From the IMG/VR virus record IMGVR_UViG_3300027754_000034, positions 186,001-250,000 of that record: a stretch of 64,000 nt of DNA. The stretch is one strand, 5' to 3'. The notes beneath the pieces are model-generated. The model did not search any database and was not told the origin of the DNA. It saw nothing but the letters and a program-made list of their open reading frames with translations. Position 1 is the first letter of the stretch. Each line of letters opens with the position of its first letter. Both the position numbers and the translations under genes were made by a program. Below are positions 9,233 through 51,908 of the stretch, in pieces.

Positions 9233-10966
9233 ATGAAAATAAAATCAGGTGAAAAATATGGGGGTTTATTATACGAAGGGCCTGATTATGAAGGAAAGAC
9301 AAGGGATGTAATCGAATTAAAATGTAACTGTGGTAGATTAAAAAAAGTACGTATATATAATCTATTAAATGGATCTACCAAAAGATGTGGATTGTGTAAT
9401 TCTATTACCCTTAAAAAGGGTGATGTATTTGGTAAATTATCCTACTTAGGTCCTACCATTGAATTACCAAAAGGGTCTAAGCGTAAAATTGAGGTTAAAT
9501 GTGATTGTGGTCGTCATAAAGATATTAAGCTAGTAAATTTAATAAATGGACTTAGTACCTCTTGTAATGAGTGTAATCACATTTTACTTAAATCGGGTGA
9601 AAATTATGGAAAGATTAAATATATTGGTTCGGACATTTACATAGGTCGGTCCAGTCATAAAAAGTTATCATTTGAGTGTGAGTGCGGTCGTCTCCATATT
9701 ACTGAACTTCAGTATTTAAATGACACCTCCTCATGCGGCAAGTGTGCTAATGTTATTTTAGAAAATGGTGAAAAGTACGTTAATTTTAAATACTTCGGAG
9801 AGCGTATAGAAATTTCTCCATATAGTAATAAGAAATTATCATTTGAATGTCGTTGCGGCACTATTAAGAATATATCGGTTCAATATATTACTAAAAATCA
9901 AAAGTCGTGCGGAAGTTGCCGAAATCAAGTCTTTGGTTGGTATCAAAATAACGCAGATTTATTGAAAAATGGTGTTCCTATTGATGGTATGTTACCGATT
10001 GGGGGACCAATTGTTTTAGAAAAAATAAAGAATGCGAGTGTTCCATTTTTGGCGCAATGTTGTGTATGTGGTAAGCAGTATAATCCGAGATATAAGGACA
10101 TTAAGCGTGGTCTTTCGTTAACGTGTGGTTGCACTCAAAACAAAACATCTTCATACAGTCTATTAATTTCGGATTACTTAAGTTCCCTAAACATAATTCA
10201 TTTTTTAGAGTATAAAGTTAATGGTTATTTTTACGATGTTTATATACCTTCGGCGAATTTGCTAATAGAAATAAATGGACTCTATTGGCATTCCTCAACT
10301 TTAGTATCTAACCTTGATGCACTTAAATATAAAACCGCATGTGAAGGTAATTATGATTTTATGATGATATATGAAGATGAAATCATAAATAAGTTTAATC
10401 TAGTAAAAGCATTGGTATTTAACCGCATTAAGTCTAAATCTTTCGTCTCTTTAAGACCCTCTCAGTGTGTAATGAAAAGGGTAGATAATCATGGATTAAA
10501 GGAATTACTAAACAACCATCACTATTTAGGTACCTGTACATTTAAGATAGGGTATGGGGTATTTTATGAAGGAATGCTTATAGCAGGCATTACTTTTTCT
10601 AGACCCACCAGGCAATCATCCTATGATTGGGAACTGACTAGGATGGTTAGTGACTCTAAGTATAAAGTACATGGAATATGGAGTAAACTCTGTGGTTTAT
10701 TCATCAGGGAAATAAACCCAAAATCAATGGTTTCATTTTCTGATAATAGACTATTTTCTGGTTTAGTGTATTCGAAGATTGGCTTTAAATATGATGGTAA
10801 TGTTCGCCCTGATTATTATTGGGTAAAAGGGAAAAACAGGTACCATAAATCAAGGCTCAGGAAGAAAAAAGGAGAAGTAGGAACTGAAAATGAGTTAAGA
10901 ATTTCCCAAGGTTATAGAAAAATAATGGACCTTGGCAAGAAGCGTTGGATATTAAATGTAACTTAG
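9233..10966 (+). CDS. Zn-repeat + Vsr/DUF559-like endonuclease + GNAT (Mom-related) fusion, copy A; homing-endonuclease-like
   Basis: Four ~58-aa G..YG.L...CxCG...SCxxC repeats plus a partial fifth; DVYIP..NLLIEINGLYWH nuclease motif; HHYLG...WELTRM...VSFSDNR..GLVY..IGF GNAT-like tail. Confidence 0.7.
   Translation: MKIKSGEKYGGLLYEGPDYEGKTRDVIELKCNCGRLKKVRIYNLLNGSTKRCGLCNSITLKKGDVFGKLSYLGPTIELPKGSKRKIEVKCDCGRHKDIKLVNLINGLSTSCNECNHILLKSGENYGKIKYIGSDIYIGRSSHKKLSFECECGRLHITELQYLNDTSSCGKCANVILENGEKYVNFKYFGERIEISPYSNKKLSFECRCGTIKNISVQYITKNQKSCGSCRNQVFGWYQNNADLLKNGVPIDGMLPIGGPIVLEKIKNASVPFLAQCCVCGKQYNPRYKDIKRGLSLTCGCTQNKTSSYSLLISDYLSSLNIIHFLEYKVNGYFYDVYIPSANLLIEINGLYWHSSTLVSNLDALKYKTACEGNYDFMMIYEDEIINKFNLVKALVFNRIKSKSFVSLRPSQCVMKRVDNHGLKELLNNHHYLGTCTFKIGYGVFYEGMLIAGITFSRPTRQSSYDWELTRMVSDSKYKVHGIWSKLCGLFIREINPKSMVSFSDNRLFSGLVYSKIGFKYDGNVRPDYYWVKGKNRYHKSRLRKKKGEVGTENELRISQGYRKIMDLGKKRWILNVT
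10204..10246 (+). repeat. 43-bp direct repeat, copy 2 (coding, start of the nuclease domain)
   Basis: Encodes LEYKVNGYFYDVYI; 42/43 identical to 9132..9174. Confidence 0.95.
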
Positions 10967-21721: not shown

Positions 21722-22191
21722 AAGACGAAGACACTAAGCCATCAGAACCCATTAAACCCAGTAAGTCATTAAAAAAGGCATCTTCAAAGAAGTCTTCCTC
21801 GATTGATTTGTCATCGGAGATAAAAATTCCGAGTTCAATGCCTTTAGAAGAAGAGATGCAAAGGACTAGTGATGGTAATAAGATTTTTAATAAAGATGAT
21901 TTATTAAGATATAGACTTTCAGAAGCTCAATTCCAAAATGCTCAGACTAATCTAGCACTAAAAAATACTGAATTTGAGTCTCAAAAGGCTCAATTCGAGC
22001 TGAAACTTAGAGATTTAATTGAGAATGTGAAGCAAAGTCGCTCACAGTATGAAGAAAAACTTCGGGCTTTGAGCATACTCAGATCAGAACTAGAGGGAAA
22101 GTATTCGATCAATTTTGATTCGATGTCCTTCCATGAACTCACTGGCGTGATTTTCGAGCACGTAAAATCCGCAGATCCCCAAAAGGAATAA
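21718..22191 (+). CDS. Coiled-coil protein (possible fibre chaperone)
   Basis: 157 aa, heptad-rich, between fibre genes. Confidence 0.5.
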   Translation: MKDEDTKPSEPIKPSKSLKKASSKKSSSIDLSSEIKIPSSMPLEEEMQRTSDGNKIFNKDDLLRYRLSEAQFQNAQTNLALKNTEFESQKAQFELKLRDLIENVKQSRSQYEEKLRALSILRSELEGKYSINFDSMSFHELTGVIFEHVKSADPQKE

Positions 22192-22196
22192 AAAAT

Positions 22197-24668
22197 ATGT
22201 CTCTTTCTAGTCTACGTAAGCCCTTAGCTATTTCAGAATCGGGCTACAGTCAAGAATTAAATGATTCTGCCAATATTCAGGTTGGTGGTCTTAGCGCCTC
22301 CACCTTGGAGATTACAGGAAACGTTGATGCAGCTAACCTTCTGGTTAGTGGTTTATCAACTTTGTCAGGAAACGTCGCCGCGTTATCGAATCTTAGCGTC
22401 GCCAGTTCTATTACCGCTGCCAGCGCGACTCTTTCGGGCGCTCTTTCTGCAGCAACCGGTGCATTCTCCGGAAACGTTTCTGTAGGAAACATTTCTTCAG
22501 GCATCATCACTGGTTCTAGTGCCGCTCTTTCGGGCGCTCTTTCTGCAGCAACCGGTAGCATATCTGGGAACGTTTCTGTCGGAAACATTTCCTCTAACAT
22601 CATCACTGGTTCTAGTGCCGCTCTTTCGGGTGCTCTTTCTGCAGCAACCGGTGCATTTTCTGGGAACGTTTCTGTAGGAAACATTTCTTCAGGCATCATC
22701 ACTGGTTCTAGTGCCGCTCTTTCGGGCGCTCTTTCTGCAGCAACCGGTGCATTCTCCGGAAACGTTTCTGTCGGAAACATTTCTTCAGGCATCATCACTG
22801 GTTCTAGTGCCGCTCTTTCGGGTGCTCTTTCTGCAGCATCTGGTAGCTTCTCTGGAACCGTTTCTGCAGGAAACCTTTCCACGACGGGATCTTTAACGTC
22901 TAACGTATTAGCCGTTTCGGGTCAAGTTACTTTATCTGGCAACGTCACCGTTGGTAACCTTTCGACTACTCTGGGTGCCCTCAGTGCCAAGACAATAACT
23001 GCCAGTGCGAATATTTCAGCAGGCAATTTATTAGCCAGTGGTCTGCTGAGTGCAGCAACCGGTAGCTTCTCTGGGAACGTTTCTGTAGGAAACATTTCCT
23101 CAGGCGCGGTTTCCGGCACCAGTGCGTCTTTTACCAGCGCAACTCTTTCGGGTTCGCTTTCTGGTACAACCGGTAGCTTCTCTGGGAACGTTTCTGTAGG
23201 AAACATTTCTTCTAACGTGGTTTCCGGCACCAGTGCGTCTTTTACTAGTGCCGCTCTCTCGGGCGCTCTTACTGCAGAAACTGGTGCATTCTCTGGGAAC
23301 GTTTCTGTAGGAAACATTTCCTCTAACATCATCACTGGTTCTAGTGCCGCTCTTTCGGGCGCTCTTTCTGCAGCAACCGGTAGCTTCTCTGGGAACGTTT
23401 CTGTAGGAAACATTTCCTCTAACGTGATTTCAGGAACTGTAGGTGCTTTCAGCACGAGTGTTACAGTTAATGGCATCGTTGTAGGCACGGACGGTAAGAT
23501 CAGTAATTTGACTGATCCGACAGCAGACCAAGACGCTGCCACCAAAAAGTATGTTGATGGTGTTGCTGCTGGCCTTGACATTAAGCCATCTGTCAAGACC
23601 ATATCTTCCTCTTTAATCACACTGAGCGGTACACAAACGGTAAACGGAGTTGCGTTAACCGCTGGTATGAGAATCCTCGTTGCCGGTCAGGGCGGCGGGG
23701 TAACGACTCCAGATACAGCAAACGGTATATATATCGTTGCAGCTGGTGCTTGGAGTCGTTCATCTGACATGGCAGCGGGTTCAGATGCAGCCGGTGCCTT
23801 TACATTCGTAGAGCAAGGAACACTATACGCAGACGCCGGATGGGTTTGCGTTACTGACACAGCAGTCGTTGGTACCAATGCTCTCCGATTTACCCAATTC
23901 TCGTCAGCAGGCGTCATAGAAGCGGGTGCCGGTCTGTTAAAGACAGGTAACACTATTGATGTTATCGTAGATGATGGTATCAAGATTGACGGTAGCAACA
24001 AGGTTGCAGTAAACCTCGCATCTTCCTCTGGCCTAGAGTTTAGCTCCAAGGCTCTGATTATAAAACTTGCTGATAACTCCCTGCAACTTGGTGCAGGTGG
24101 TTTAAGTGTGAAGCTTAGCGGCTCAACACTCGATGAGACGGCGAGCGGTCTTGAAGTTCTTGGTGTTCCCACTCTGTTCACCGTGGCGGGAACCGCCACT
24201 GCCGCTCATGTTACTGCAGCTAACTTGGGTGTTTATTCAAGTGGTGTTGCATCTGTTGGTGGTGATGCTTCAGCACTTCACTTCCACAACATGGTCGAAT
24301 CTATGGACTTCTCAGCCCATAGTAGTGGATTGACCAAGGGAGATCCTGTCTACGTTTCATCTAGTTTTGAGGCCAAGAAGGCAACAGCGGCTGTAGCAGA
24401 TGGAGACGGCATGGTCTTCGGTGTTGCTGTAGCGAACGTTGCTGGTGGTAACACTTCTAGAGTCATTTGTTCCGGCGTAGCACTTGGAGTGCTTACTGGG
24501 CTGAGCGGAACCGGTGCTGGTTTTAAGGTATATCTTGGCGATTCAGGTGGACTAACCACTAACATTGCCACAATATCGGCAGGAAAGCGCTTAATCCTTA
24601 TGGGTGTGTGCATAAACTCGAACGACTTGTTCGTTCAGGTTCGTGATTACGGTCAGAAGGCTAGCTGA
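22197..24668 (+). CDS. Long fibre protein with tandem repeats
   Basis: Ser/Gly/Ala repeats; DAATKKYVD motif; LSGTQTVNGV...NGIY...WSR head/tail-fibre domain; C-terminal KGDPVYV cement-like domain. Confidence 0.75.
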   Translation: MSLSSLRKPLAISESGYSQELNDSANIQVGGLSASTLEITGNVDAANLLVSGLSTLSGNVAALSNLSVASSITAASATLSGALSAATGAFSGNVSVGNISSGIITGSSAALSGALSAATGSISGNVSVGNISSNIITGSSAALSGALSAATGAFSGNVSVGNISSGIITGSSAALSGALSAATGAFSGNVSVGNISSGIITGSSAALSGALSAASGSFSGTVSAGNLSTTGSLTSNVLAVSGQVTLSGNVTVGNLSTTLGALSAKTITASANISAGNLLASGLLSAATGSFSGNVSVGNISSGAVSGTSASFTSATLSGSLSGTTGSFSGNVSVGNISSNVVSGTSASFTSAALSGALTAETGAFSGNVSVGNISSNIITGSSAALSGALSAATGSFSGNVSVGNISSNVISGTVGAFSTSVTVNGIVVGTDGKISNLTDPTADQDAATKKYVDGVAAGLDIKPSVKTISSSLITLSGTQTVNGVALTAGMRILVAGQGGGVTTPDTANGIYIVAAGAWSRSSDMAAGSDAAGAFTFVEQGTLYADAGWVCVTDTAVVGTNALRFTQFSSAGVIEAGAGLLKTGNTIDVIVDDGIKIDGSNKVAVNLASSSGLEFSSKALIIKLADNSLQLGAGGLSVKLSGSTLDETASGLEVLGVPTLFTVAGTATAAHVTAANLGVYSSGVASVGGDASALHFHNMVESMDFSAHSSGLTKGDPVYVSSSFEAKKATAAVADGDGMVFGVAVANVAGGNTSRVICSGVALGVLTGLSGTGAGFKVYLGDSGGLTTNIATISAGKRLILMGVCINSNDLFVQVRDYGQKAS
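22429..22870 (+). repeat. 96-nt (32-aa) coding tandem repeat, block 1 (~4.5 units)
   Basis: Unit starts at 22429, 22525, 22621, 22717, 22813; near-identical DNA. Confidence 0.95.
23050..23430 (+). repeat. 96/111-nt coding tandem repeat, block 2
   Basis: Anchor points at 23143, 23254 (+111) and 23350 (+96). Confidence 0.9.
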
Positions 24669-41278: not shown

Positions 41279-42514
41279 ATGCGTACACGTACCACCTGGC
41301 AGGGCAAGGGAAGCGAAACCGCGCGTCAGGCGACAACGGTCCGCCGTGCGGATATCTATGACATGAACTTTGGAGGACCACGTCCCCAACCTGCTCCGGA
41401 CCAATATATGGCTCCGGATGCAGGTCCAGATAAGTGGGCGGAGACTCCAGCGTCATATGACCGTATTTCTGAAGAGTATGATTCAAAGGGTCATGTTCTT
41501 CGCAACGAAAACGGTATGGCGGAGTTCCGGAAAAATACTTTTGATCGTCCTTCATGGGGTGACGAGAAGAAATATGACAACCGTACAGCTTCAGAACGCA
41601 AGGCAGTTGCCGCTCACAGACTTGCTTCATATTTATTAAAGACAACTGACCGTGGCCTTGTTCGCAAGGTCGCTCTCGGATTCATGTCAATGCCCGATGC
41701 AGCTGTTAGTACAGCTCTTCGTGCAGTTGATCAGATTTCTCCCAAGTCTCTCCCAGATGAATCTCGGTTCAAGCGTGCCTTTGCTTGTACTAAGTTAGCA
41801 GCTGGAATGCTTGGCGATGGTTCTACAGAGGAGTCAGTCGAACGTCTCGCTCGTTCGATCTACGAGGTCGACGACCCTACTCTTCGTTCCATTGTGAAGT
41901 CTGTTGCTATGGCGAAGATCGCCCAGCAGCAAGAGGAAGAGGAAGAGGAAGAGGAAGAGGAAGAGGAAGAGGAAGAGAAAGATGCCTCTTCTATGAAGCC
42001 TGAGCATCCTGCTAAGCAAGCTCAGGAAGAGGAAGAGAAAGATGCCTCTTCTATGAAGCCTGAGCATCCTGCTAAGCAAGCTCAGGAAGAGGAAGAGGAA
42101 GAGGACTCCTGTGGTTCTGATTCCATGATGGGTGGCATGCATGCTCAGGCAGAAGAGGAAGAGGAAGAGGAAGAGGAGGATGAATCCGGCGTCCCAGTTG
42201 ATGTCCAGATTATGCTCGAGCAAATGAAGCTTCCTGCCATGAGCGGTCTTCCTGCCATGTCAGAGTCTCCTGCAGCTCCTGCAGCTCCTGCAGCTCCTGC
42301 AGCTCCTGCAGCTTCGGTTGCAGCTTCTTTAGAGGCTCTTTTTTCTGATGATCCTGAGGTTCAGGCTCACCGCGAAATCATGGCAGCTTCAAACCCTGGC
42401 TTTAAGTCAGGACGAGTTGCCTCGACCAGTGGTGCTAAGAAGCTCGGTAAAGTCCAAGCTTCCGATCAGAAGAACGCAACTTCTTCTTTAGAAGCATTGT
42501 GGGATCGTTCCTGA
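41279..42514 (+). CDS. Scaffold-like acidic head protein
   Basis: Between protease and capsid genes; poly-Glu tracts, disordered repeats. Confidence 0.6.
   Translation: MRTRTTWQGKGSETARQATTVRRADIYDMNFGGPRPQPAPDQYMAPDAGPDKWAETPASYDRISEEYDSKGHVLRNENGMAEFRKNTFDRPSWGDEKKYDNRTASERKAVAAHRLASYLLKTTDRGLVRKVALGFMSMPDAAVSTALRAVDQISPKSLPDESRFKRAFACTKLAAGMLGDGSTEESVERLARSIYEVDDPTLRSIVKSVAMAKIAQQQEEEEEEEEEEEEEEEKDASSMKPEHPAKQAQEEEEKDASSMKPEHPAKQAQEEEEEEDSCGSDSMMGGMHAQAEEEEEEEEEDESGVPVDVQIMLEQMKLPAMSGLPAMSESPAAPAAPAAPAAPAASVAASLEALFSDDPEVQAHREIMAASNPGFKSGRVASTSGAKKLGKVQASDQKNATSSLEALWDRS
41930..42100 (+). repeat. (GAGGAA)n poly-Glu tracts and a 60-nt tandem duplication
   Basis: EEEEKDASSMKPEHPAKQAQ occurs twice in tandem. 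Confidence 0.9.
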
Positions 42515-42525
42515 AATAAAATTTT

Positions 42526-42561
42526 AACCCCAGATGGAGACTAAGGTTTTCATCTGGGGTT
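42526..42561 (+). terminator. Hairpin terminator after the scaffold gene
   Basis: aaccccagatg...catctggggtt followed by T run. Confidence 0.7.
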
Positions 42562-42720
42562 TTAGATAAAGAAACGCAGACTTTTACAGAACCTAGGGAA
42601 GTTTTTAGGGAAATATAAACAACAATTTGGACGGATTCGCGGAATAGGCCGGACTGAATTCACAGATTGTAAAAATTCATTGTTTACCCGAAAAGCTGAC
42701 TGAAGGACTGGAGTAATAAA

Positions 42721-43371
42721 ATGGGAATCGGCGGACAAGCATCAGGCGATTTTAAGCTTGACAATAGTGCGCTGCGTATCCTCTACTCGCTTATCAAGGA
42801 TACTATTCCTTCTTTAGCGAGCGATGGATTTACGCAGAATAATCCTTCTGTCGTAGTGGCAGCTGCGAACGCTTCAACAACCTTTCCTGTGGACGTCAAG
42901 AAGGGCGTTCTTGGTGGTTCTTGTGCGTTCCTTCGTCCCGACGTGGGTTCTAACGTAGTTGGCGGTGCCGTAGTCGATGGCATGGGCGACTATTACGTTG
43001 GTACGCGTCCAGTAGGTCTTTTCATCAATGACGCCAAGGGTGGCGCATATGAGAACACACCTTCGGTGGCTTCGGGCAAATGCCCGTTCCTTCGTGGTGG
43101 TTCCGTTGGTGTTAAGATTTATGAGACCCAGAAGCAGATTGGTGCTGATGATGACCTCACCTACTTGGTTGGTGATTTCCTCTACGCCTCAGTCAATGGC
43201 CTTCTGACCAAGAACTGGGAAGACTCGTACGAGAAGCAGTGGATTGACACTGCTACTACGGGCAGCGGCGCGGGTGGCGTTGCAATTGAACCGGATGTCA
43301 CCCGTATGGGTGTTGTCCTTTCACCCCCAGATGCAAACTCATCGGAGCTGTTCCTCGCGCTCTTCTTCTGA
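42721..43371 (+). CDS. Capsid decoration/minor capsid protein
   Basis: Immediately upstream of MCP; YENTPSVASGK...YET...GDFLYAS.NGLLT; strong codon bias. Confidence 0.6.
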   Translation: MGIGGQASGDFKLDNSALRILYSLIKDTIPSLASDGFTQNNPSVVVAAANASTTFPVDVKKGVLGGSCAFLRPDVGSNVVGGAVVDGMGDYYVGTRPVGLFINDAKGGAYENTPSVASGKCPFLRGGSVGVKIYETQKQIGADDDLTYLVGDFLYASVNGLLTKNWEDSYEKQWIDTATTGSGAGGVAIEPDVTRMGVVLSPPDANSSELFLALFF

Positions 43372-43398
43372 GCCTAGGACAGAGAAAGGACTATTATT

Positions 43399-44286
43399 AT
43401 GGCATACGGAGTACAGGTGGTTGATAACGCCATCAAAGAGCAGATTGTTGACAAGTTCATTGGAACGAGCGCTGGTCGTCGCCACTTAGCGGCTTCTATG
43501 ATTCAGCCTCTTCGCGAGCGTCGCGATTATTCGTCCGTTGGCCGCAAGACGTTCCTCGTCGAGCAGCTACCGGACGGAGCGCTTCCCATCTACGACAAGG
43601 ACCCCGACGTCGTTGCTTACGTCATCGGGGAAGAAGGCGAGTCGATCACGGCGGTTTCTAAGCCCCGCCGTGTTATCTTCCCGCTCTTCGAGATCGCGGC
43701 CCTCCCCAAGGCTCCTCTTACGCAGATCAAGGAGCGTCGTTACGACCTCCTCAAGCGTATGCAGGACCTTGGTAAGGCTCAGATCCAGGCTGCTGAGGAC
43801 GATCGCGTGTTCAGCATCCTCGATGCTATCGCGGTTAATGGCTTCGACAGCCTTCCTGGTGGTACGAACCCGGATATTCCGGTCGTTGCTCCCATCTCGC
43901 CTGCCATCCTTGCGGATGCGTTTGCCGAGATCGAGCGCCACGACCTGCGTGTTGCTCGCGTTTATATGAACGCGACCGATTACGCAGACGTTCGTAAGTT
44001 CGGACGCGACGTTCTCGATATCGAGAGCCAAGCGACGCTCTGGAAGACCGGTATGATGGCAACGGGCTGGAACGCCCAGTTCATCGTCTCGCGTCTCGTT
44101 CCCGCAGGCGTTGTTTACGTCTGCTGCGAGCCCGAGATGTTTGGTCGCATCCCGGTTCGTACTGAGCTGACCGTATTGAGCGCGGATAATCCCGAAGAGC
44201 GCACAATCGGGTTCAGCATGTTTGAGAATCTTGGTATTGGCGCATACAATCCACGCGGATTAGTGCGCCTCATCGTCCAACGCTGA
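43399..44286 (+). CDS. Major capsid protein (HK97 fold, Bxz1/cluster C-like)
   Basis: LAASMIQPL..RRDY..VGRK...VEQLPDGALP.YD, FEIAALP, QAAED; strong codon bias; terminator follows. Confidence 0.85.
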   Translation: MAYGVQVVDNAIKEQIVDKFIGTSAGRRHLAASMIQPLRERRDYSSVGRKTFLVEQLPDGALPIYDKDPDVVAYVIGEEGESITAVSKPRRVIFPLFEIAALPKAPLTQIKERRYDLLKRMQDLGKAQIQAAEDDRVFSILDAIAVNGFDSLPGGTNPDIPVVAPISPAILADAFAEIERHDLRVARVYMNATDYADVRKFGRDVLDIESQATLWKTGMMATGWNAQFIVSRLVPAGVVYVCCEPEMFGRIPVRTELTVLSADNPEERTIGFSMFENLGIGAYNPRGLVRLIVQR

Positions 44287-44390: not shown

Positions 44391-45893
44391 ATGATGTGCA
44401 GAATATGCAATGCTGTTAGCCAGCACGATCTTTGCAATGTATGTCGTCAGGATACTAACTACTTAGTAAAATACCCAGTATTAAAGAATATCCTTACAGA
44501 TTCAGCCTTAGAGGTCTTGGATTTTAATCCCTCGCGCTCTGACTTTCAACGAGTAGACGTTATATGTGGTGAATGCAAGAGTACTAATAATATAGATTTA
44601 GTTAGCATCCTTAAATATATAAGACGTCATCTAAAAAAGAATCCCTATAACATATATAAGTGTCATTCATGTTCTAAAAGAGGGGAATCTCTCATTAGTC
44701 TCAAAGAGGTGATGCCGATCATAGATATGAAACTCACACAGGAAAAACATGGTGGAATAGGTAAAAATGTAAAAAAGTCCCTTGTTGTGGTCAAATGCGA
44801 GGATTGTTATGAACTATCAGACATTAAGTTAAGTAGTTTACTGCATGGGGCTAGAAGGCATCAGAAGCTAGGTCGAAAGTGTATTTACAAGTGTTTTAAG
44901 TGTGGTGTTCTATTGCCGGATGCCATAAAGAAGTCCAATGATGCCAGAGCTAAGCAGTTAGCTGTAGGAGCCCGTTCTCATATCGAAGTCGCTTTAGCCA
45001 ATAGATTAAAGGCTTTGAATATAGAATATGAGGAGTAGTTTCGTACCGATATGTATGTTTGGGACTTTTACCTCCCTAAGTATTTATTATTAATAGATGT
45101 AAATGGAGAATACTGGTATGGACTATCTCGGAATAAATCAAAAGATAAGTCTAAACTGACTTATGTAGAAAATTATCTACCTGAATATAAAACCCTAATC
45201 ATAGAGGAAAAGCGTTTTCTAAACCCCTTGATGGTAGATAAAATAATTAAGGACGCCATAGGAGAATCTAAGAAGATTACGGTAGAAGAGTTTAGCTTAT
45301 TGGATGTGATCATTAATCAGTCCTCAAAGGTATCTAAGTCCAAAAGGTCTACGGAATCTGATTTTTTAAACTCTTATCATTACTCAGGATTTGGTCGGAA
45401 CGGGAAATTAGTAATTACGGCACATCTTAATGAATCATTGGTGGCACTTTGTAAATTTAGTGGTACGACTCGACAAGGCACTGCTAAGTCTTTGGGTTAT
45501 AAATGTTATGAAGTCCTGGAACTTGACAGATTCTGCATACATCCTTCTTATCATAAAAAGAACTTCGCTTCTTGGTTTTTGTCACGATGTATGAAATTAG
45601 TATTTGAATCGAATAAACTTATGCAATGTTTGGTATCATTCGCAGATCCCACATATGGTCATACCGGCACTATTTATAAAGCCACAAATTGGGAAATGAA
45701 AGGCAAAACCAATCCAAGTTACCATTATATGGATCACTTAGGGGTTCCAGTCAATAAGAAGAGGATTTATGACTTTGCACAAAAACTTCGGATGAAGGAA
45801 GCTGAATATGTTGAACTTCATGGACTACAGAAGTTCTCTGAATTACCCAAGATTAAATATGTTTACAAGCGTTTTTCATCCGGGTCTAGATAG
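44391..45893 (+). pseudogene. Zn-ribbon repeats + degenerate endonuclease + Mom-like GNAT fusion, copy B, split by an in-frame TAG at 45036..45038
   Basis: ORFs 44391..45038 and 45051..45893 are in the same frame; YEE*FRTDMYVWDFYLP aligns to YKEQYVVGPYIFDFYLP of copy C. Confidence 0.75.
45051..45893 (+). CDS. Mom-family GNAT DNA modification protein (possible independent restart)
   Basis: YHYSG, LELDRFC, SWFLSR, VSFADPTYGHTGTIYKATNW match the Mu Mom family pattern. Confidence 0.7.
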   Translation: MYVWDFYLPKYLLLIDVNGEYWYGLSRNKSKDKSKLTYVENYLPEYKTLIIEEKRFLNPLMVDKIIKDAIGESKKITVEEFSLLDVIINQSSKVSKSKRSTESDFLNSYHYSGFGRNGKLVITAHLNESLVALCKFSGTTRQGTAKSLGYKCYEVLELDRFCIHPSYHKKNFASWFLSRCMKLVFESNKLMQCLVSFADPTYGHTGTIYKATNWEMKGKTNPSYHYMDHLGVPVNKKRIYDFAQKLRMKEAEYVELHGLQKFSELPKIKYVYKRFSSGSR

Positions 45894-46040
45894 TTCTGTT
45901 GGTATCATGTTCCAAATGGGTGATGGGGATCATTACCTTTTCATTAGTATGAATTTACTGTGTTGATGTTCGTTCATATTTGTGCTTCGCTATTTATTAG
46001 AACATACTTATCCTTTAATTTTTTATGTCACACATAAAAT

Positions 46041-46541
46041 ATGAATCGTAGTGCTATTTCTCCTTCGCGAATCTCAACGTCTCTGCGTCGCATAGCTTCC
46101 GCTATCGAGAATTCGGAGAATCCCTCACGTGAGTTGGTAGCAAGGGAGTTACAACGTCTAGTAAGAAAAATAGCTGGTAACGAAGACGGAATTTCAGTAC
46201 TTGGTCAAACGGTAAATGTTGAGGTTCCCGGTTTGGGTCTCGTACCTGTAATACTTACTAAAGTCGAATTCTTTGATGAGAAGAATACTCGAAATGTGGT
46301 AGGAACTATAAATGGTTTTATGGTCAAGACTAGTACATACAGTAGATCTTATAAGGTAGATCCTACTGATATCCTTCCTGTGGAGTTAAAGCAATATTTC
46401 GATCCTGAAGGATTCCGACCTGTCGACGCTTTTGCCATCGCAATAGACAAAATTCTTAAGAATTATGGGATAGAGGACGAGTACCCAATTATAGAAAATG
46501 GTATATATTTTTCTAGTGAGCAGGATGACGACTCAATATAA
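46041..46541 (+). CDS. Putative virion-targeted protein
   Basis: LRRIASAIENSENPSRELV...RKIAG leader. Confidence 0.55.
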   Translation: MNRSAISPSRISTSLRRIASAIENSENPSRELVARELQRLVRKIAGNEDGISVLGQTVNVEVPGLGLVPVILTKVEFFDEKNTRNVVGTINGFMVKTSTYSRSYKVDPTDILPVELKQYFDPEGFRPVDAFAIAIDKILKNYGIEDEYPIIENGIYFSSEQDDDSI

Positions 46542-46558
46542 CGATAAAGAATAGTAGA

Positions 46559-46587
46559 CTACAGGATTCCTCATCGAAATCCTGTAG
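46559..46587. terminator. Hairpin downstream of the 46041 gene
   Basis: ctacaggatt...aatcctgtag. Confidence 0.5.
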
Positions 46588-46820
46588 AGTGCTCTACACG
46601 CATTTAATTTATAAAATGTGTTAAGTATATAGGGAAATAAAGTGGAGAAGTATTCATCCTCCCTGGGTCTAAAGTTAGTAAGTACATAACAATGTGATTA
46701 AAGAAACTCGGGATATTGAAGTTCAGTATAAACCCGGCCCACATGACGACGTTAGAACATGTGGTTCCTTTATATAATAAAAACCAGGAATAACTAATGA
46801 TTTTTTTAGTATAGTATTCT

Positions 46821-47054
46821 GTGATACAGATAAAATTTTCTAAATTTGATGGTGGTAACATAGTATCAGCTGGCGGAGATTTAGTAGAAGTCACTGATAA
46901 ATATGTAATAGTTAAACATCAAGATGTCAGTTACTCCTTCCGAAGGACTCCCGGTTCTAAATCGGGATATGGTATTGGGGCGGCAAAAAATTGGAGGCTG
47001 GGGTTAGAAGAAAGAAACCAGCATGTTCACCCTGAAAATCTGAAGAAAAGATAA
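46821..47054 (+). CDS. Hypothetical protein
   Basis: 77 aa, GTG start, followed by a hairpin. Confidence 0.45.
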   Translation: MIQIKFSKFDGGNIVSAGGDLVEVTDKYVIVKHQDVSYSFRRTPGSKSGYGIGAAKNWRLGLEERNQHVHPENLKKR

Positions 47055-47091
47055 TTTAACCATCAATATATAAGCTATTGATGGTTAAATT
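47053..47091. terminator. 16-bp inverted repeat hairpin
   Basis: aatttaaccatcaata-tataagc-tattgatggttaaatt. Confidence 0.6.
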
Positions 47092-47119
47092 TTGTGTAAC
47101 TTCCTAACGGAGAATTTCT

Positions 47120-47380
47120 ATGAAAATGCTTAACGTTGTTTCAGTTTTGATTCTAGCTCTCGTGTCTTGTGGTAAGGACGAAAGTAAGCCTGTTGATGCC
47201 GCTTCTTCGGCTTCCGTGGGCTCTGGTGGCTCCGGTGGTGCCAAAATGGTTAGTGGTTCAGGAGGCGCAGACGGAGACGGAGGAACGGGCGGAGCGGTTG
47301 CATCCTCGGTTTCCGGTTCTGGTGGAGCCGGTATGGGTGGTTCTGGTGGAGCCGGAATGGGTGGTTCTGGCGGCAAGTGA
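47120..47380 (+). CDS. Small Gly-rich lipoprotein
   Basis: Signal peptide with LVSC lipobox, GSGG/GAGMGG repeats; GGAG RBS. Confidence 0.75.
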   Translation: MKMLNVVSVLILALVSCGKDESKPVDAASSASVGSGGSGGAKMVSGSGGADGDGGTGGAVASSVSGSGGAGMGGSGGAGMGGSGGK

Positions 47381-47401
47381 CTATCTAGCATATAATGTCC
47401 A

Positions 47402-47433
47402 AGGGGAAACGACCGATATCAGTCGTTTCCCCT
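47402..47433 (+). terminator. Terminator hairpin
   Basis: aggggaaacgac...gtcgtttcccct with downstream T tract. Confidence 0.7.
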
Positions 47434-47526
47434 CATTAGTTTTTTCATATTGATTTGGTTTGTGGACCAGAAGATTTTTTCTTCTTCCATTTCTTACATT
47501 GTGCTACTTCTAAATAATCGGAAAGA

Positions 47527-48072
47527 TTGACAGTTATGGATCATTTCTATCAAAGTGTTTCTGGTTGGTTTGAATCTTTGGATTTATTTAGTTTCGTTGT
47601 AAATAAATATGATCAAGCTCACTTCGTTGAAGTAGGTTCTTGGAAGGGTCGCAGCTCCTGCTGTATGGCAGTAGAAATCATAAATTCGAAGAAATCTATC
47701 AAATTTGACTGTGTAGACTTATGGGAATACTCTGATTCCCAAAATGATATTTCTTCTAATGAATTTGAAGGAGTATACGGGGAGTTTATTTCCAACATAT
47801 CTAAAGTTGCCCATTATATAAATCCTGTAAAATCTACTTCAGTAGAAGCATCTAAACTATATTTAGATGCTTCTTTAGATTTCGTCTTTATAGATGCAGC
47901 ACATGATTATGAGAATGTGAAAAAAGATATAGAAGCTTGGTTACCTAAGATGAAGTCCGGTGGTATTATCTCTGGTCATGACTATTTCTTTTCTCAAGGG
48001 GTGAGACGTGCTGTACATGAAATACTCGGTGAAGTGCATACTACTTCAGAATCTTGGTATAAAGAAGTTTAA
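47527..48072 (+). CDS. Class I SAM-dependent methyltransferase (Methyltransf_24-like)
   Basis: VEVGSWKGRS, DFVFIDAAHDYE, LPK.K.GG..SGHDY; TTG start. Confidence 0.85.
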   Translation: MTVMDHFYQSVSGWFESLDLFSFVVNKYDQAHFVEVGSWKGRSSCCMAVEIINSKKSIKFDCVDLWEYSDSQNDISSNEFEGVYGEFISNISKVAHYINPVKSTSVEASKLYLDASLDFVFIDAAHDYENVKKDIEAWLPKMKSGGIISGHDYFFSQGVRRAVHEILGEVHTTSESWYKEV

Positions 48073-48102
48073 TAAACTCATTATGATCCATGGAGTCGAA
48101 TC

Positions 48103-49086
48103 ATGAATAAATCATACCTAATGGGGATTGTAACTTGGATATCGGCTGTTTGCTTGGCTGGCTGCCCGTCAGATTTGACTCAAAAGAAAAATGAGCAGGT
48201 TTCCAGATTAAGAATAGTTAATGGTTGCAGTGACCCGATGTGGATTTTCTGGTATAATTCTGAGGGTGGTGGGGACTCGGGTACCCCCAAAAAATTCATA
48301 CTTGATGCTGGCAAACCCTATCTGGATGTGCAAATCCCAGACGCTGGATTTGCTGGTTCACGTTTTTGGCCGGGATATAACTGCGATCCTGAAGGAAACG
48401 GTTGTCAGATAGGACAGAGTGGTGGTCCCGCTAAGTACGGGTTCACTTGTCCTCCTGAGGGTTGTGCTCCACCAGTTGATAGTAAATTCGAGGGTACATT
48501 CGGTTGTTTATCAACTGTCGACCCTTCTTTATGTCAAATAAACCCTTCTGGGGCTCCCGGTCAGCGTTTACCTACCGCTGATTCTTGGGACACTAGTATG
48601 GTGGATGGATATACTCTTCCATATAAAGTTAGGGTGCTAGACGATTGCATTGGTGGTCCTAATAACAACGCGATTGACTGTTCTAATCTTTCGATGTCTT
48701 CTTGTCCCGATAATGAGGATCTTTCTTCTGGCGGTATTCATCCAGAATATTCTAGTATGGAACTAAACGTTAGTAACCCATCGACTGGAAAGAAAGCTGG
48801 ATGTTTTTCTGATTGTGGAAGACTTACTTATAACAATTGGAAGTATGAACCGGGGTTAAATCCGTCAGATTTACCGGCTGTTGATTATTGTTGTCCTGTA
48901 TCGGAGATTAGTCCAGAATCTTGCCGAAAGGGGCCAGTAGCTAACACGAGTTATGTCGATCTTATACATCAACAATGTCCTCAAGTATATGCATACTCCT
49001 ATGATGAAACAAATCCGAGCGGAGCATTGTGGTCCTGCCCAGCCGGGACCAGATATGAAGTGACGTTTTACTGCCCCAATTTTTGA
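48103..49086 (+). CDS. Thaumatin-like (PR-5/GH64-TLP superfamily) lipoprotein
   Basis: LAGC lipobox; IVNGC, FWP..NC, KFE, WDTSMVDGYTLP, DYCC, CPQVYAYSYDE, C.AGTRYEVTFYCP; 18 Cys after the lipobox Cys. Confidence 0.8.
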   Translation: MNKSYLMGIVTWISAVCLAGCPSDLTQKKNEQVSRLRIVNGCSDPMWIFWYNSEGGGDSGTPKKFILDAGKPYLDVQIPDAGFAGSRFWPGYNCDPEGNGCQIGQSGGPAKYGFTCPPEGCAPPVDSKFEGTFGCLSTVDPSLCQINPSGAPGQRLPTADSWDTSMVDGYTLPYKVRVLDDCIGGPNNNAIDCSNLSMSSCPDNEDLSSGGIHPEYSSMELNVSNPSTGKKAGCFSDCGRLTYNNWKYEPGLNPSDLPAVDYCCPVSEISPESCRKGPVANTSYVDLIHQQCPQVYAYSYDETNPSGALWSCPAGTRYEVTFYCPNF

Positions 49087-49380
49087 TAGCTGATTTCAAG
49101 TCCCTTTTCCATAAAATCTATTGTGGCTGCATTTCTAGATATGGAGAAGTCATATGTTACATTATTTATGTTATTGCCAGTTTGTTCCTCGTTGAAATTC
49201 CAACTATTTTGCCAAGATATTTGAGAAAATTCATTTGTGGAAAATCCCATCAGTCCAAAAACGCTTATTCATTAAGTAATGACTAGTGTTGACAGAGATT
49301 CCGAATATCTTCACATCTTTCTTGCTTTGTATGATAGTTGTAACCCTTCTTTCTTCGGCTGTGCACTTTCCTGGAACATA

Positions 49381-49563
49381 TTAATATCCTCCGGATTTAT
49401 ACCATCCCGATCCTATTAGTAAAAAAGCGCCCTGTTTTGATATTATCCTTTTAAAGGTGTTTTCTTTACATTCGGGACATTGTTTTAGTGGTTCCTCTTT
49501 AATGGATTGAAAGACTTCAATTATTTTTTGACACTTGTCGCATTCATATTCGTAATTGGGCAT
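49381..49563 (-). CDS. FmdB-family zinc-ribbon protein
   Basis: MPNYEYECDKC...CPEC...GSGWY. Confidence 0.85.
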   Translation of the reverse strand: MPNYEYECDKCQKIIEVFQSIKEEPLKQCPECKENTFKRIISKQGAFLLIGSGWYKSGGY

Positions 49564-49618
49564 ATTTAATTATACAGCTTTATAGATCTAGATAACATCT
49601 TAATGCCTAGCGATCATT

Positions 49619-50047
49619 ATGAATGATTTTCTTTCTTTTCTGGATAAACATGGTTATTTTTTAACAGCTTCAATTGTCTGGCCTGTCTTTTCCGGCATAA
49701 TCAATTATTTTTTTCATAAAAAATCACCTGAGGCATGGGTGGCATGGTCAGAAAAGAACCCGAAGCTTTCTGTAGTAAATAAAATTCTTAGGGCAGCTGG
49801 TTTTGATCCTGTGAAATTTTTGGAAGCTATGAAACAATTTATAGAATTGTATGCGAAGCAAATTGAAAAGAAAGAAGAAATTGTATCGCACGAGTCGAAC
49901 CAAGATTCGGAGGTTCCTGCTGTCGTGATTATTGTAGATGATGTAAAGCCGGAGTCTACTTCCGAACCTATTAAGAAGGCATTGAAGGTTCCTAAGAGTA
50001 TTAAGAAAAAGACTCCGCCAAAACCTCTGAAAAGTCGTAAAAATTAG
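49619..50047 (+). CDS. Single-TM membrane protein, holin candidate
   Basis: N-terminal hydrophobic helix, basic C-tail, upstream of the endolysin. Confidence 0.4.
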   Translation: MNDFLSFLDKHGYFLTASIVWPVFSGIINYFFHKKSPEAWVAWSEKNPKLSVVNKILRAAGFDPVKFLEAMKQFIELYAKQIEKKEEIVSHESNQDSEVPAVVIIVDDVKPESTSEPIKKALKVPKSIKKKTPPKPLKSRKN

Positions 50048-50061
50048 ATGTACATTTTCCC

Positions 50062-50277
50062 ATGAACGGATTTGGGAGAAGGAACAAAGTCGGTAGTCTA
50101 AGGTTAGAAGAAAGAAGGCACTTAATTATTATAGGGATTCAGGAGTCCCGAAGAATATATGGATTTAGTAATTCGACTTATCGGGCTATGACTGACTCCC
50201 ACGGAGTGGTTAGTGTTAACACTATAAACCGATTCCGCAATATTTATGACAAGTTATTTATGGAGTCTTCTCTATAA
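50062..50277 (-). CDS. Hypothetical small protein
   Basis: 71-aa ORF filling the gap. Confidence 0.4.
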
Positions 50278-50280
50278 ATC

Positions 50281-50982
50281 ATGCAAATTAATGATGACCT
50301 ACGTATTTCGAGTAATGGTGTAAAATTTATAACTAAGTGGGAGGGATTAAAACTTTCTAAATATTTATGTCCCGCTGGTAAATGGACTATTGGTGTGGGT
50401 CATGTTATACTTCCACATGAGAACATATCGGATACTATTACAAAGGAGCGGGCTGAATCAATTCTGCGTTCCGATTTAGTGAGATTTGAAAAAGCAATCA
50501 AGAAGTTTATAACTGTACGTCTAAATCAAAATCAATTTGATGCCCTGGTAAGTTTCATATTTAACACTGGTGAGGGTGGTATTAGAAATACTTCTGTACA
50601 ATCGACGGTAAATGAGCAGAAGTTTTCAGAAGTACCTGAAAAACTCCAGATGTGGAGTAAAATGAGACAAAATGGAAAGTTGGTGGTTAGTCAGGGACTT
50701 TTAAGACGAAGAATGAGTGAGTCAGAATTATTCATGCTTTCTGTTCCTGAACCACCTTCAATGATTTTTCATTTATGGACTAAAGAATCATTGAAGGTGG
50801 TTCAGGCGGTTCTCACCGAATTGAATTTCTATGATAAATCCATAGATGGAATATACGGTCCTGGTACTGCCATGGGTCTTAAGAAATACTGTATGTCAAT
50901 TAATTTTTTGGATGGTCAATATGATGACAATGGGATTGCTAAATCTTTATATGATTCGATCGTGATCAAGAATCTAGGTTAA
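50281..50982 (+). CDS. Endolysin: GH24 lysozyme + peptidoglycan-binding domain
   Basis: WEGL...YLCPAGKWTIGVGH, NQNQFDALVSF.FN, GLLRRR..E; C-terminal IDGIYGPGT. Confidence 0.92.
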   Translation: MQINDDLRISSNGVKFITKWEGLKLSKYLCPAGKWTIGVGHVILPHENISDTITKERAESILRSDLVRFEKAIKKFITVRLNQNQFDALVSFIFNTGEGGIRNTSVQSTVNEQKFSEVPEKLQMWSKMRQNGKLVVSQGLLRRRMSESELFMLSVPEPPSMIFHLWTKESLKVVQAVLTELNFYDKSIDGIYGPGTAMGLKKYCMSINFLDGQYDDNGIAKSLYDSIVIKNLG

Positions 50983-51236
50983 CCTACGATTCTGGCTTTA
51001 TGCGTTTTCTCCCTGGTCTTGCCTAAGTATTTATTGATATTATTTCTTAAATGTTCGAGGTTCTCATGTACAGGGTGAATAAATTCAATTATTTTCCCAT
51101 TCACATCAACATATAAAATATAATTAGGTAGTTCGATCTTATAATCAACTAGTTTATGCTCTGTAAAAGGGACCCAAGCGAATTCCTTCTTATCAACTAC
51201 TCCGCAAAGTTGGTATAGAGAGTCGTGTACTTTCAT
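50979..51236 (-). CDS. Hypothetical protein
   Basis: 85-aa ORF. Confidence 0.5.
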   Translation of the reverse strand: MKVHDSLYQLCGVVDKKEFAWVPFTEHKLVDYKIELPNYILYVDVNGKIIEFIHPVHENLEHLRNNINKYLGKTREKTHKARIVG

Positions 51237-51332
51237 GGATTCGATTACCTTTAATTTTAAAAATTCGAGAATGGGGAGAGTCTAGACACCTAGAATTTTA
51301 TAAGATGTGATAATTCCAGACGTCTAGATAAG

Positions 51333-51908
51333 TTACATTACCAATTCAGAAATTTTCTCTATACTGGTATGATCGGGAATCGCTAATCCTCGTTCTAAGT
51401 AATTTTTGATTCCTTCTAATGAATATTCTATCTTATGATCATCATACCACTCTGGTTTTTTAGTGCCTTTATTCCACTTGGCAAATAATTTTTCTCCTTT
51501 ATAATAAGACCGATATGCTACGATTGTGCCTTCATTCCGGTATATAAGAGGCATTACTTGTGGTGGTTTAGTGAATGATGATTCTCCCCATTGAATTCTA
51601 CTCATGTCATTTGATACCCTGTTTAACACAGATAAGCAGGCATGTGTTTTATGGAATCTTTTCGTATACTCTCTTGATATTTCATAGGCATGGGTTAATA
51701 ACCAAGAAAAGTTCCCTTCAGATTTCACTGTCCACCTAGAGCATGGGTGATTTTTCATCAGCAATCTATAAGGCGGGTCTGTTAATTTAAATATGTGATA
51801 TGCATTAGAAAGCATTTGGGCTGATTCTAGCAGCATCTTTGGAATATGTTTATCACATAAATTCTGAGCTGCAATATTTGGATCAAAATCAGTAAAGAAT
51901 ACGTTCAT
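51333..51908 (-). CDS. Pyrimidine-dimer DNA glycosylase/endonuclease V-like protein
   Basis: MNVFF..DP..AAQ..CDKHIPKM.LESAQML...NHPC..W pattern. Confidence 0.7.
   Translation of the reverse strand: MNVFFTDFDPNIAAQNLCDKHIPKMLLESAQMLSNAYHIFKLTDPPYRLLMKNHPCSRWTVKSEGNFSWLLTHAYEISREYTKRFHKTHACLSVLNRVSNDMSRIQWGESSFTKPPQVMPLIYRNEGTIVAYRSYYKGEKLFAKWNKGTKKPEWYDDHKIEYSLEGIKNYLERGLAIPDHTSIEKISELVM

What the first reader, a model, noticed from the sequence alone, without database searches (positions are those of the whole stretch)
48103..49086. Phage-encoded thaumatin-like (PR-5) lipoprotein
Seen: LAGC lipobox, 18 further cysteines, and thaumatin motifs with acidic cleft residues retained (KFE, WDTSMVDGY, YSYDE). 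Established: thaumatin-like proteins are beta-1,3-glucan-binding or hydrolysing antifungal proteins, best known from plants and fungi, and are not a typical phage gene. Inference: a host-derived surface enzyme that could arm the infected cell against fungi/oomycetes or remodel extracellular glucans. A disulfide-rich lipoprotein implies a host envelope with oxidative folding.
Basis: partly seen in the sequence, partly recalled or inferred. Interest (0 to 1): 0.7.

Follow-up and report, generated by a model that had tools for sequence, protein, structure and literature searches.

The report
Thaumatin-like lipoprotein gene in huge phage
A very large freshwater bacteriophage carries an intact gene for a membrane-anchored, disulfide-rich protein of the thaumatin (plant PR-5) family; relatives recur on other large uncultured phages, probably bind or cut beta-1,3-glucan, and no paper found reports them in phages.

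The parts
48103..49086 (+). Coding sequence of the thaumatin-like lipoprotein precursor (327 aa plus stop)
   Evidence: ORF list; Pfam PF00314, 56.5 bits; single PF00314 match in the whole viral record
48092..48095 (+). GGAG Shine-Dalgarno-like motif, 7 nt before the ATG at 48103
   Evidence: Read directly from the sequence; supports M1 rather than the M7 start used in the database gene call P0001
48103..48165 (+). Signal peptide with lipobox: n-region MNK, hydrophobic core, L18-A-G-C21; C21 is the predicted lipidated first residue of the mature protein
   Evidence: Regex and direct reading; a Cys at the end of the signal peptide is present in most close relatives, including every phage-context copy whose N-terminus was read (L001, L003, L005-L007, L099, L100, L102; P0006, P0039, P0040, P0044). 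Lipidation itself was not tested
48205..49083 (+). Thaumatin-fold domain, residues 35-327, with about 80 residues of insertions relative to plant TLPs (for example the C135-C144 loop)
48361..48363 (+). R87, equivalent of the cleft Arg (motif RFW)
   Evidence: 91 of 91 conserved; aligned to RFW of Pru av 2, Mal d 2 and the Puccinia TLP
48490..48492 (+). E130, probable equivalent of the cleft Glu (motif KFEGTF)
   Evidence: 91 of 91 conserved; placement rests on hydrophobic periodicity and needs a one-residue register shift against plant TLAEF; not confirmed by residue-level superposition
48589..48606 (+). D163...D168 in WDTSMVDGY, equivalents of two cleft Asp residues
   Evidence: 90 of 91 and 91 of 91 conserved; aligned to YDVSLVDGF of plant TLPs
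49003..49008 (+). D301-E302 in YSYDE, equivalent of the third cleft Asp (plant YAYDD)
   Evidence: D301 is 91 of 91 conserved; position 302 is D in 88 and E in 3; aligned
47527..48072 (+). Methyltransf_24 gene 30 nt upstream, probably co-transcribed; the same pair order occurs in related phage L003
   Evidence: Pfam 72 bits; PHROG 2675; synteny; no terminator-like site between the two genes. Co-transcription is an inference
47402..47433 (+). Terminator-like hairpin (12-bp stem, T-run) that would end the preceding transcription unit
   Evidence: Consensus scan only

Best explanation
The gene is a functional accessory gene ('moron') of a huge phage. Its product is exported by the Sec pathway, probably lipid-anchored at Cys21, and folded in an oxidising periplasm or on the cell surface into a thaumatin-fold domain held by nine disulfides. 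Tethered to a membrane by a linker of about 13 residues, it presents a conserved acidic cleft (R87, E130, D163, D168, D301) that most likely binds, and may hydrolyse, a beta-1,3-glucan-type polysaccharide. So the infected cell acquires an extra envelope-bound glucan-binding or glucanase activity. The substrate could be external glucans (algal laminarin or chrysolaminarin, fungal or oomycete walls), for scavenging or antagonism. Shown: gene integrity, family, predicted fold, conserved residues, phage setting and recurrence in phages. Inferred: lipidation, the ligand, catalysis, and what the phage gains.
Against: No biochemical data exist for any member of this long bacterial/phage TLP subfamily in the literature searched. 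Many plant TLPs bind glucan without hydrolysing it, and some are enzyme inhibitors (own knowledge). E130 was not placed in the cleft by residue-level superposition. Cellular homologs are not in glycan-utilisation loci. An outer-membrane lipoprotein may face the periplasm, where external glucan is out of reach. The host is unknown, no RNA run was listed, and dS is saturated so dN/dS could not be computed.
Confidence: 0.5

Rival explanations
1. The protein acts on the host's own envelope. As a periplasm-facing or surface lipoprotein it would bind or degrade a host glucan (periplasmic cyclic beta-glucans, a curdlan-like exopolysaccharide or a capsule), either to aid lysis and virion release or to destroy or mask a receptor and so block superinfection.
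For: Phage-encoded lipoproteins classically serve lysis (o-spanins) or superinfection exclusion (T5 Llp, Cor) (own knowledge). The gene lies 1.2 kb upstream of the GH24 endolysin, between the head module and the lysis genes. The default location of a diderm lipoprotein is periplasmic. All phage copies keep the lipoprotein signal.
Against: Proximity to lysis genes is seen only in the window and its close relative L003; other phage contigs place the gene among unrelated genes. There is no similarity to spanins, Llp or Cor: no PHROG hit at all. At 327 aa with a globular nine-disulfide domain it is unlike an o-spanin. Whether the unknown host makes any beta-1,3-glucan is unknown.
Confidence: 0.2
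2. It is an anti-eukaryote factor. The phage arms the infected cell or lysogen with a PR-5-like antifungal or anti-protist protein that protects the virocell from fungi, oomycetes or grazers during a long infection.
For: Plant TLPs with this acidic cleft are antifungal (PMC13148976; own knowledge). Cellular carriers are mainly bacteria that interact with eukaryotes: predatory Myxococcota, Legionellales, and a Rickettsiales endosymbiont of a euglenid. One TLP-bearing contig has an integrase, consistent with lysogenic conversion.
Against: A membrane-tethered protein with a short linker can hardly reach a fungal membrane, and the antifungal plant TLPs are soluble. No antifungal activity has been shown for any bacterial TLP in the papers searched. 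There is no evidence that the host meets fungi. This is purely an analogy.
Confidence: 0.12
3. It is a protein inhibitor or adaptor rather than a glycan-active protein. Like the thaumatin-like xylanase inhibitor TLXI or the amylase/trypsin-inhibiting zeamatin, it would bind and block a host or competitor periplasmic enzyme or a receptor protein.
Against: TLXI is a short form lacking domain II and the cleft (own knowledge), whereas here the full cleft set is invariant. The fusions to CBM and GH16 domains in relatives argue for carbohydrate substrates.
Confidence: 0.08
4. It is a passenger or artefact: a bacterial gene misassembled into a viral contig, or a recently acquired and functionless insertion.
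For: Gene GC (44.3%) is a little above the genome's (39.8%). The record is a metagenome assembly estimated at only 60% complete.
Against: The same gene in the same context is found at 100% identity in a second IMG/VR record from another sample id (L004) and on a 25.9 kb Logan contig with even depth and no joints, though that run may be the source sample. A related phage from another run keeps the gene in synteny at 66% identity, like its neighbours. The ORF is intact and every family-invariant residue is present.
Confidence: 0.03

Closest known systems
Plant and fungal PR-5 / thaumatin-like proteins (Pru av 2 2AHN, Mal d 2 3ZS3, osmotin 1PCV, tobacco PR-5d 1AUN, zeamatin 1DU5, Puccinia TLP 7P23)
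   Different: Only 20-29% identity. About 290 residues in the domain rather than about 205, with insertions such as the C135-C144 loop. 18 rather than 16 mature Cys. A lipoprotein signal instead of a eukaryotic secretory signal. The PROSITE signature is not matched. Encoded by a phage.
Bacterial 'thaumatin family proteins' of Nannocystaceae (Nannocystis pusilla, strain ST9) and other Myxococcota, Acidobacteriota and Gammaproteobacteria
   Same: The same long TLP subtype with all invariant residues and Cys. 55-57% identity for Nannocystaceae, which also carry lipoprotein signals. In one tree and in the AU test they are as good a sister group to the window's gene as the phage clade is.
   Different: Chromosomal, in ordinary housekeeping neighbourhoods. 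About 70% GC. Long Ser/Thr/Glu-rich linkers after the lipobox. None is characterised experimentally in the papers searched.
Amycolatopsis rifamycinica TLP (PDB 7P22), the only bacterial TLP structure among the matches
   Different: A short, plant-like form (about 220 residues) at 17-22% identity, from an actinomycete, not of the long lipoprotein subtype. No paper on it was found in the library.
GH64 laminaripentaose-producing beta-1,3-glucanases (3GD0, 5H9Y, 7VTK)
   Different: 10-15% identity, about 370-410 residues, not Cys-rich, with an additional barrel domain. The window protein is clearly closer to TLPs.
Thaumatin-domain proteins of eukaryotic viruses (Tupanvirus, Feldmannia species virus, Satyrvirus; closterovirus p28/p30-type proteins)
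   Same: A virus-encoded thaumatin fold.
   Different: These are viruses of amoebae, algae and plants. They have no lipobox and are distant in sequence (12-19% identity).
Phage-encoded lipoproteins (o-spanins; T5 Llp and Cor-type exclusion proteins)
   Same: A phage gene whose product carries a lipobox and would sit in the host envelope (own knowledge).
   Different: No sequence or fold relationship (no PHROG hit), and much larger, with a nine-disulfide globular domain.

Membership tests
Thaumatin family (Pfam PF00314, PR-5/TLP) | Sequence match to the family HMM above the curated threshold, over the full domain | tested here: met
   56.5 bits against a cut-off of 27.4, E 4e-15, profile positions 1-207 of 209; confirmed on the six-frame genome search
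Thaumatin family (Pfam PF00314, PR-5/TLP) | Thaumatin three-domain fold | tested here: met
Thaumatin family (Pfam PF00314, PR-5/TLP) | Conserved cysteines forming 8 disulfides (16 Cys) in long-type TLPs | tested here: inconclusive
   The mature protein has 18 Cys. 16 are invariant or near-invariant in 91 homologs, and C42/C324 and C238/C263 covary perfectly. Connectivity and one-to-one correspondence with the plant pairs were not checked because no model coordinates were available
Thaumatin family (Pfam PF00314, PR-5/TLP) | Acidic cleft: Arg and three Asp of the five conserved residues | tested here: met
   R87, D163, D168 and D301 align to the RFW, YDxSxVDGF and YxYDD motifs of plant TLPs and are conserved in 90-91 of 91 sequences. 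The cleft definition comes from PMC13148976
Thaumatin family (Pfam PF00314, PR-5/TLP) | Acidic cleft: the Glu | tested here: inconclusive
   E130 is 91 of 91 invariant and fits the plant Glu if the strand is aligned by hydrophobic periodicity, but an ungapped alignment is off by one. A segment search of PDB sequences gave nothing
Thaumatin family (Pfam PF00314, PR-5/TLP) | PROSITE thaumatin signature PS00316 (pattern recalled from memory) | tested here: not met
   Regex finds no match; the corresponding region reads GYNCDPEGNGCQIGQ.
Thaumatin family (Pfam PF00314, PR-5/TLP) | Beta-1,3-glucan binding or hydrolysis, or antifungal activity | not testable with these tools
   Indirect support only: fusions of the same domain type to CBM56, CBM6/35 and GH16, and GH64 as the next fold class
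Bacterial lipoprotein (Lgt/LspA substrate) | Signal peptide with a positive n-region, a hydrophobic core and the lipobox [LVI][ASTVI][GAS]C | tested here: met
   MNK, then a 14-residue hydrophobic core (S4-C17), then L-A-G-C21. A Cys at the same place is found in most close relatives, including all phage-context copies whose N-terminus was read; the closest relative, P0002, has the atypical VAIC. No dedicated predictor (SignalP/LipoP) was available
Bacterial lipoprotein (Lgt/LspA substrate) | Actual diacylglyceryl modification and signal peptidase II cleavage; final membrane and topology | not testable with these tools
   Needs labelling, globomycin treatment and fractionation in the unknown host or a surrogate
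GH64 beta-1,3-glucanase | Closest sequence and structure relationship to GH64 rather than to TLPs | tested here: not met
Phage accessory gene (moron / auxiliary gene) | Located inside a bona fide phage genome, with phage hallmark genes on both sides | tested here: met
   TerL 30524, portal 33044, protease 39727 and MCP 43399 lie upstream and endolysin 50281 downstream. The record is an IMG/VR virus. MCP is 77% identical to the 485 kb phage LR745208
Phage accessory gene (moron / auxiliary gene) | Not part of the conserved core; patchy distribution among related phages | tested here: met
   Absent from all 50,697 GenBank phage records, including the nearest relatives LR745208 and Tunturi_5. Present on unrelated backbones
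Spanin (outer-membrane lipoprotein subunit) | A small lipoprotein encoded next to or within an i-spanin gene in the lysis cassette | tested here: not met
   327 aa with a globular TLP domain, separated from the endolysin by four ORFs including a minus-strand gene. No lysis PHROG
Known anti-phage defence systems (PADLOC) | Match to a defence-system protein model | tested here: not met
   No PADLOC hit for the TLP or its neighbours, apart from a homing-endonuclease hit for the ORF at 45051

The most novel reading that the evidence does not exclude
Lipid-anchored thaumatin-like proteins form a gene lineage largely restricted to phages and maintained by huge phages of diderm bacteria. The phage would use it to re-tool the infected cell's surface for a cross-kingdom interaction: binding or attacking beta-1,3-glucan-bearing eukaryotes (fungi, oomycetes, algae, grazers), or harvesting their glucans, during long infections. 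That would make it the first phage-borne member of the PR-5 'plant defence' family with an ecological role.
Probability: 0.12. Interest if true: 0.8.

Novelty: new member of a known kind. Interest (0 to 1): 0.52.

Why it matters
Thaumatin-like proteins are treated in the literature as plant, fungal and animal proteins; the 2026 review read here mentions bacteria once. This analysis shows a long, lipid-anchored bacterial subtype that large uncultured phages have picked up repeatedly and kept intact. One clade has so far been seen only on phage-like contigs. If the protein binds or cleaves beta-1,3-glucan as inferred, phages could be moving a cell-surface glycan-handling or anti-eukaryote trait between bacteria. 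That would widen the range of known phage accessory functions and give a tractable, very stable protein for testing. If it acts on the host envelope instead, it would be a new type of phage lipoprotein effector. In either case it is an easy target to express and assay.

Tried and rejected
(1) DNA and tblastn searches of GenBank phages for the region and for the TLP found no match.
(2) PHROGs, PADLOC and NCBIfam gave nothing for the TLP.
(3) A segment-only search of PDB sequences, meant to align the Glu strand, found nothing. The 'bridging' protein P0121 turned out to be the same long subtype, so it clarified only the inserted loop.
(4) dN/dS between the window and L003 could not be computed because dS is saturated; only dN was comparable.
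(5) Promoter scan: promoter-like sites occur at chance level and were not used.
(6) Host inference failed. There are no tRNAs in the window, and the 7 in the record are not informative. The nearest cultured phages infect Acidobacteriota (Tunturi_5) and Bacillus (phage G) but are distant. No cellular genome carries a member of the phage clade as a prophage.
(7) RNA evidence: no RNA run was listed.
(8) Common origin of all phage copies: not shown. The window pair is sister to the phage clade in one tree and to Nannocystaceae in another, and the AU test rejects neither.
(9) Conserved gene neighbourhood across phage copies: none beyond the window/L003 pair.
(10) The spanin, defence-system and GH64 readings were rejected (see the membership tests).
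(11) Literature searches for phage or myxobacterial thaumatins returned nothing relevant.

Full report
OBSERVATION. The ORF at 48103-49086 (+) is present exactly as described and encodes 327 aa. Direct counting gives 20 cysteines: C17 in the signal-peptide core, C21 in an L-A-G-C lipobox, and 18 further ones. The motifs KFE (128), WDTSMVDGY (162) and YSYDE (298) are all there. A GGAG motif 7 nt upstream supports the first ATG, which gives the signal peptide a Lys-containing n-region; the database gene call P0001 starts six codons later.

CLEFT AND DISULFIDES. The cleft of antifungal TLPs is defined by one Arg, one Glu and three Asp (PMC13148976). Profile and pairwise alignments place R87 on the plant RFW motif, D163 and D168 on YDxSxVDGF, and D301 on YxYDD. 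These residues are conserved in 91, 90, 91 and 91 of 91 homologs. E130 is also invariant. It corresponds to the plant Glu if the strand is aligned by its hydrophobic periodicity (F129/G131/F133 with plant A/F/L). That needs a one-residue register shift, and I could not verify it on coordinates. D126 and D160 are invariant too. Sixteen cysteines are invariant or nearly so. C42 and C324 covary perfectly (72 Cys/Cys, 19 neither, none mixed), as expected for a disulfide tying the N- and C-terminal strands, so this protein probably has nine disulfides.

PHAGE SETTING. The window is bases 186001-250000 of a single 257,205-bp IMG/VR virus record. The record is linear and CheckV rates it about 60% complete. 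PHROG and Pfam scans identify the following genes:
- ribonucleotide reductase
- an ExoV/Dda-type helicase
- a clamp loader
- a virion protein
- large terminase (30524)
- portal (33044)
- head protease (39727)
- major head protein (43399)
- a GH24 endolysin (50281)
. The major head protein is 77% identical to that of an uncultured 485-kb phage (LR745208), 45% to Tunturiibacter phage Tunturi_5 (309 kb) and 38% to Bacillus phage G. This is therefore a member of a phage-G-like lineage of huge phages, from a freshwater metagenome.

The TLP gene lies between the head module and the lysis region. It is 30 nt downstream of a Methyltransf_24 gene with no terminator between them, and a strong terminator-like hairpin at 47402-47433 closes the preceding unit. 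Three results argue against a chimera. A second IMG/VR record carries the same 17 kb at 100% identity (L004). A Logan assembly of run X1 spans 46000-51500 in one 25.9-kb contig with even depth and no joints, although X1 may be the source sample. And a 5.2-kb contig from another run (L003) keeps seven neighbouring genes in synteny at 52-76% identity, with the TLP at 66%.

RELATIVES. The word-indexed search found more than 250 homologs. The exhaustive search found 409 clusters at 50% identity with E <= 1e-3. In one genome per GTDB species, a pattern-seeded scan returned 82 loci. They are mostly Myxococcota (Nannocystis, Sorangium, Byssovorax, Kofleriaceae), then Legionellales, Acidobacteriota, a few Alpha- and Gammaproteobacteria, and Fibrobacterota. 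The best hit is Nannocystis at 57%. Legionella thaumatin motifs had been listed as 'eukaryotic-like' (PMC4256840). Two cellular copies that I inspected sit in ordinary chromosomal neighbourhoods. Multidomain relatives fuse this TLP type to CBM56, CBM6/CBM35, GH16, SKN1/KRE6-like, ricin-B and golvesin domains. From my own knowledge of CAZy, CBM56 binds beta-1,3-glucan and GH16 includes the laminarinases, so these fusions are the best available pointer to the ligand.

RECURRENCE IN PHAGES. No GenBank phage record, PHROG family or phage entry in BFVD has a TLP. The only viral thaumatin folds in BFVD belong to viruses of eukaryotes. Among uncultured sequences the picture is different:
- IMG/VR holds nine loci, one of which is this phage. 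Five of the nine contigs exceed 100 kb: 298, 199, 202 and 110 kb, plus this phage's own 257 kb record.
- A 277-kb JGI contig carries a copy.
- Contigs of 34, 58, 52 and 36 kb with phage-like content carry copies. That content includes GP88/phrog_1617, ThyX, DUF3310, methylases, a muramidase and an integrase.
- L007 has a portal gene 4 kb from its TLP.
These contigs share nothing but the TLP with the window phage in the flanks examined, and most are 56-70% GC against 40% here. Every phage-context copy whose N-terminus was read (L001, L003, L005-L007, L099, L100, L102; P0006, P0039, P0040, P0044) starts with a signal peptide ending in Cys, usually followed by a Pro/Thr-rich linker; the N-termini of L098 and L101 were not recovered in the stretches read.

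PHYLOGENY. In a 168-row tree, a clade of 43 sequences holds eight copies with phage context and 35 of unknown context. None of the 80 sequences taken from cellular genomes falls inside it. The window's gene and its L003 partner form a long-branched pair. Its position is unstable: sister to that phage clade (IQ-TREE, SH-aLRT 88) or sister to Nannocystaceae (FastTree, 89). An AU test rejects neither, and the Nannocystaceae-constrained tree has the higher likelihood. A third, more distant viral group (L099-L102, 35-39% identity, with Asn at the D163 position) sits with unclassified MAG sequences.

There are caveats. The locus scans are seeded on two peptide patterns and so undercount. Binned genomes tend to exclude phage contigs. 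Most members of the clade lie on short contigs. 'Phage-restricted' is therefore provisional.

MECHANISM. The following is shown: an intact, conserved gene in a phage, a thaumatin-family sequence, a predicted thaumatin fold, an invariant cleft, covarying cysteines and a canonical lipobox.

The following is inferred. The protein is exported by Sec, lipidated at C21 and folded oxidatively in a periplasm, which implies a diderm host with a Dsb-type system. It ends up as a membrane-tethered domain that binds and possibly cleaves a beta-1,3-glucan-type polymer. I give this molecular model about 0.5.

What the phage gains is open. The options and my estimates are:
- gain of an envelope-bound activity on external glucans, which is part of the best explanation;
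- action on the host's own envelope glucans, for release or superinfection exclusion (0.2);
- anti-eukaryote 'arming' (0.12);
- an inhibitor or adaptor role (0.08);
- an artefact or passenger gene (0.03).

The gene's dN against L003 (0.28) lies within the range of its neighbours (0.17-0.39), which fits long co-inheritance. dS is saturated, so selection could not be quantified. No RNA run was listed.

NOVELTY. As a protein it is a clear member of a known family, and bacterial homologs are already auto-annotated as 'thaumatin family protein'. What is new is the phage carriage, its recurrence on several unrelated large phages, the apparently phage-only clade, and the uniform lipoprotein anchoring. 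None of the full-text searches returned a paper on thaumatins in phages or myxobacteria. I rate it a new member of a known kind, of moderate interest.

Noticed in passing
window 47120-47380 (+), hairpin 47402-47433: An 86-aa ORF with an L-V-S-C lipobox followed by a Gly/Ser-rich low-complexity tail, ended by a strong terminator-like hairpin. It is possibly a second small phage lipoprotein 0.7 kb upstream of the TLP. Overlapping ORFs in other frames make the call uncertain, and it has no Pfam or NCBIfam hit.
   Followed up: partly
window 49068-49250 (-); compare L003 2072-2752 (-): Only the C-terminal 60 aa of an FMN_red (NAD(P)H-dependent FMN reductase) gene remain here. They overlap the TLP 3' end by 19 nt. 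The related phage L003 has the intact 226-aa gene at the same place, so the window phage has lost most of it.
   Followed up: partly
G000 contig C1 153497-153571 (-), outside the window: One of the record's seven tRNAs has anticodon TCA (reads UGA; ARAGORN calls it tRNA-SeC). It is a possible opal-suppressor tRNA of the kind seen in some huge phages. ORFs in the window look normal under code 11.
   Followed up: no
L099-L102 (IMG/VR contigs of 53, 38, 202 and 110 kb): A second, divergent group of viral TLPs (35-39% identity to the window's; lipoprotein signals FLAGC, VSGC and FTGC read in L099, L100 and L102). It has Asn at the D163 position and its nearest relatives are in unclassified MAG contigs. 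L101 has 38% GC, like this phage, but shares no flanking genes with it.
   Followed up: partly
P0098-P0120 clade; L103 and L104 (context of P0113): Relatives at 43-48% identity carry an N-terminal transmembrane anchor instead of a lipobox. P0113 (Tara and other marine samples) lies beside a CFAP97-like gene, an ankyrin gene and a split threonyl-tRNA synthetase, which suggests a picoeukaryote. If so, the long TLP subtype spans bacteria, phages and eukaryotes.
   Followed up: partly
window 9233-10966 (+) and 45051-45893 (+): Two HNH / Mom-like homing-endonuclease-type genes, the second lying about 0.8 kb downstream of the major head gene, past one intervening ORF. They may mark mobile insertions in the structural region.
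   Followed up: no
window 22001-24000 and 42001-44000: Local GC peaks (0.48 and 0.52 against about 0.37 nearby). They coincide with an 823-aa virion or decoration-like protein and with the ORFs just before and including the major head gene.
   Followed up: no
window 49619-50277 (+): Two small ORFs directly upstream of the endolysin: 142 aa with one hydrophobic N-terminal segment, and 71 aa. Both are conserved in L003 and could be holin or lysis-accessory genes. Neither has a family hit.
   Followed up: no
L025 (287-kb contig binned in 'bacterium isolate SKS1.bin41') and L084 (282-kb contig, 'uncultured bacterium'): TLP-bearing contigs of jumbo-phage size sit inside MAG bins. They might be mis-binned phages rather than chromosomal fragments.
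   Followed up: no
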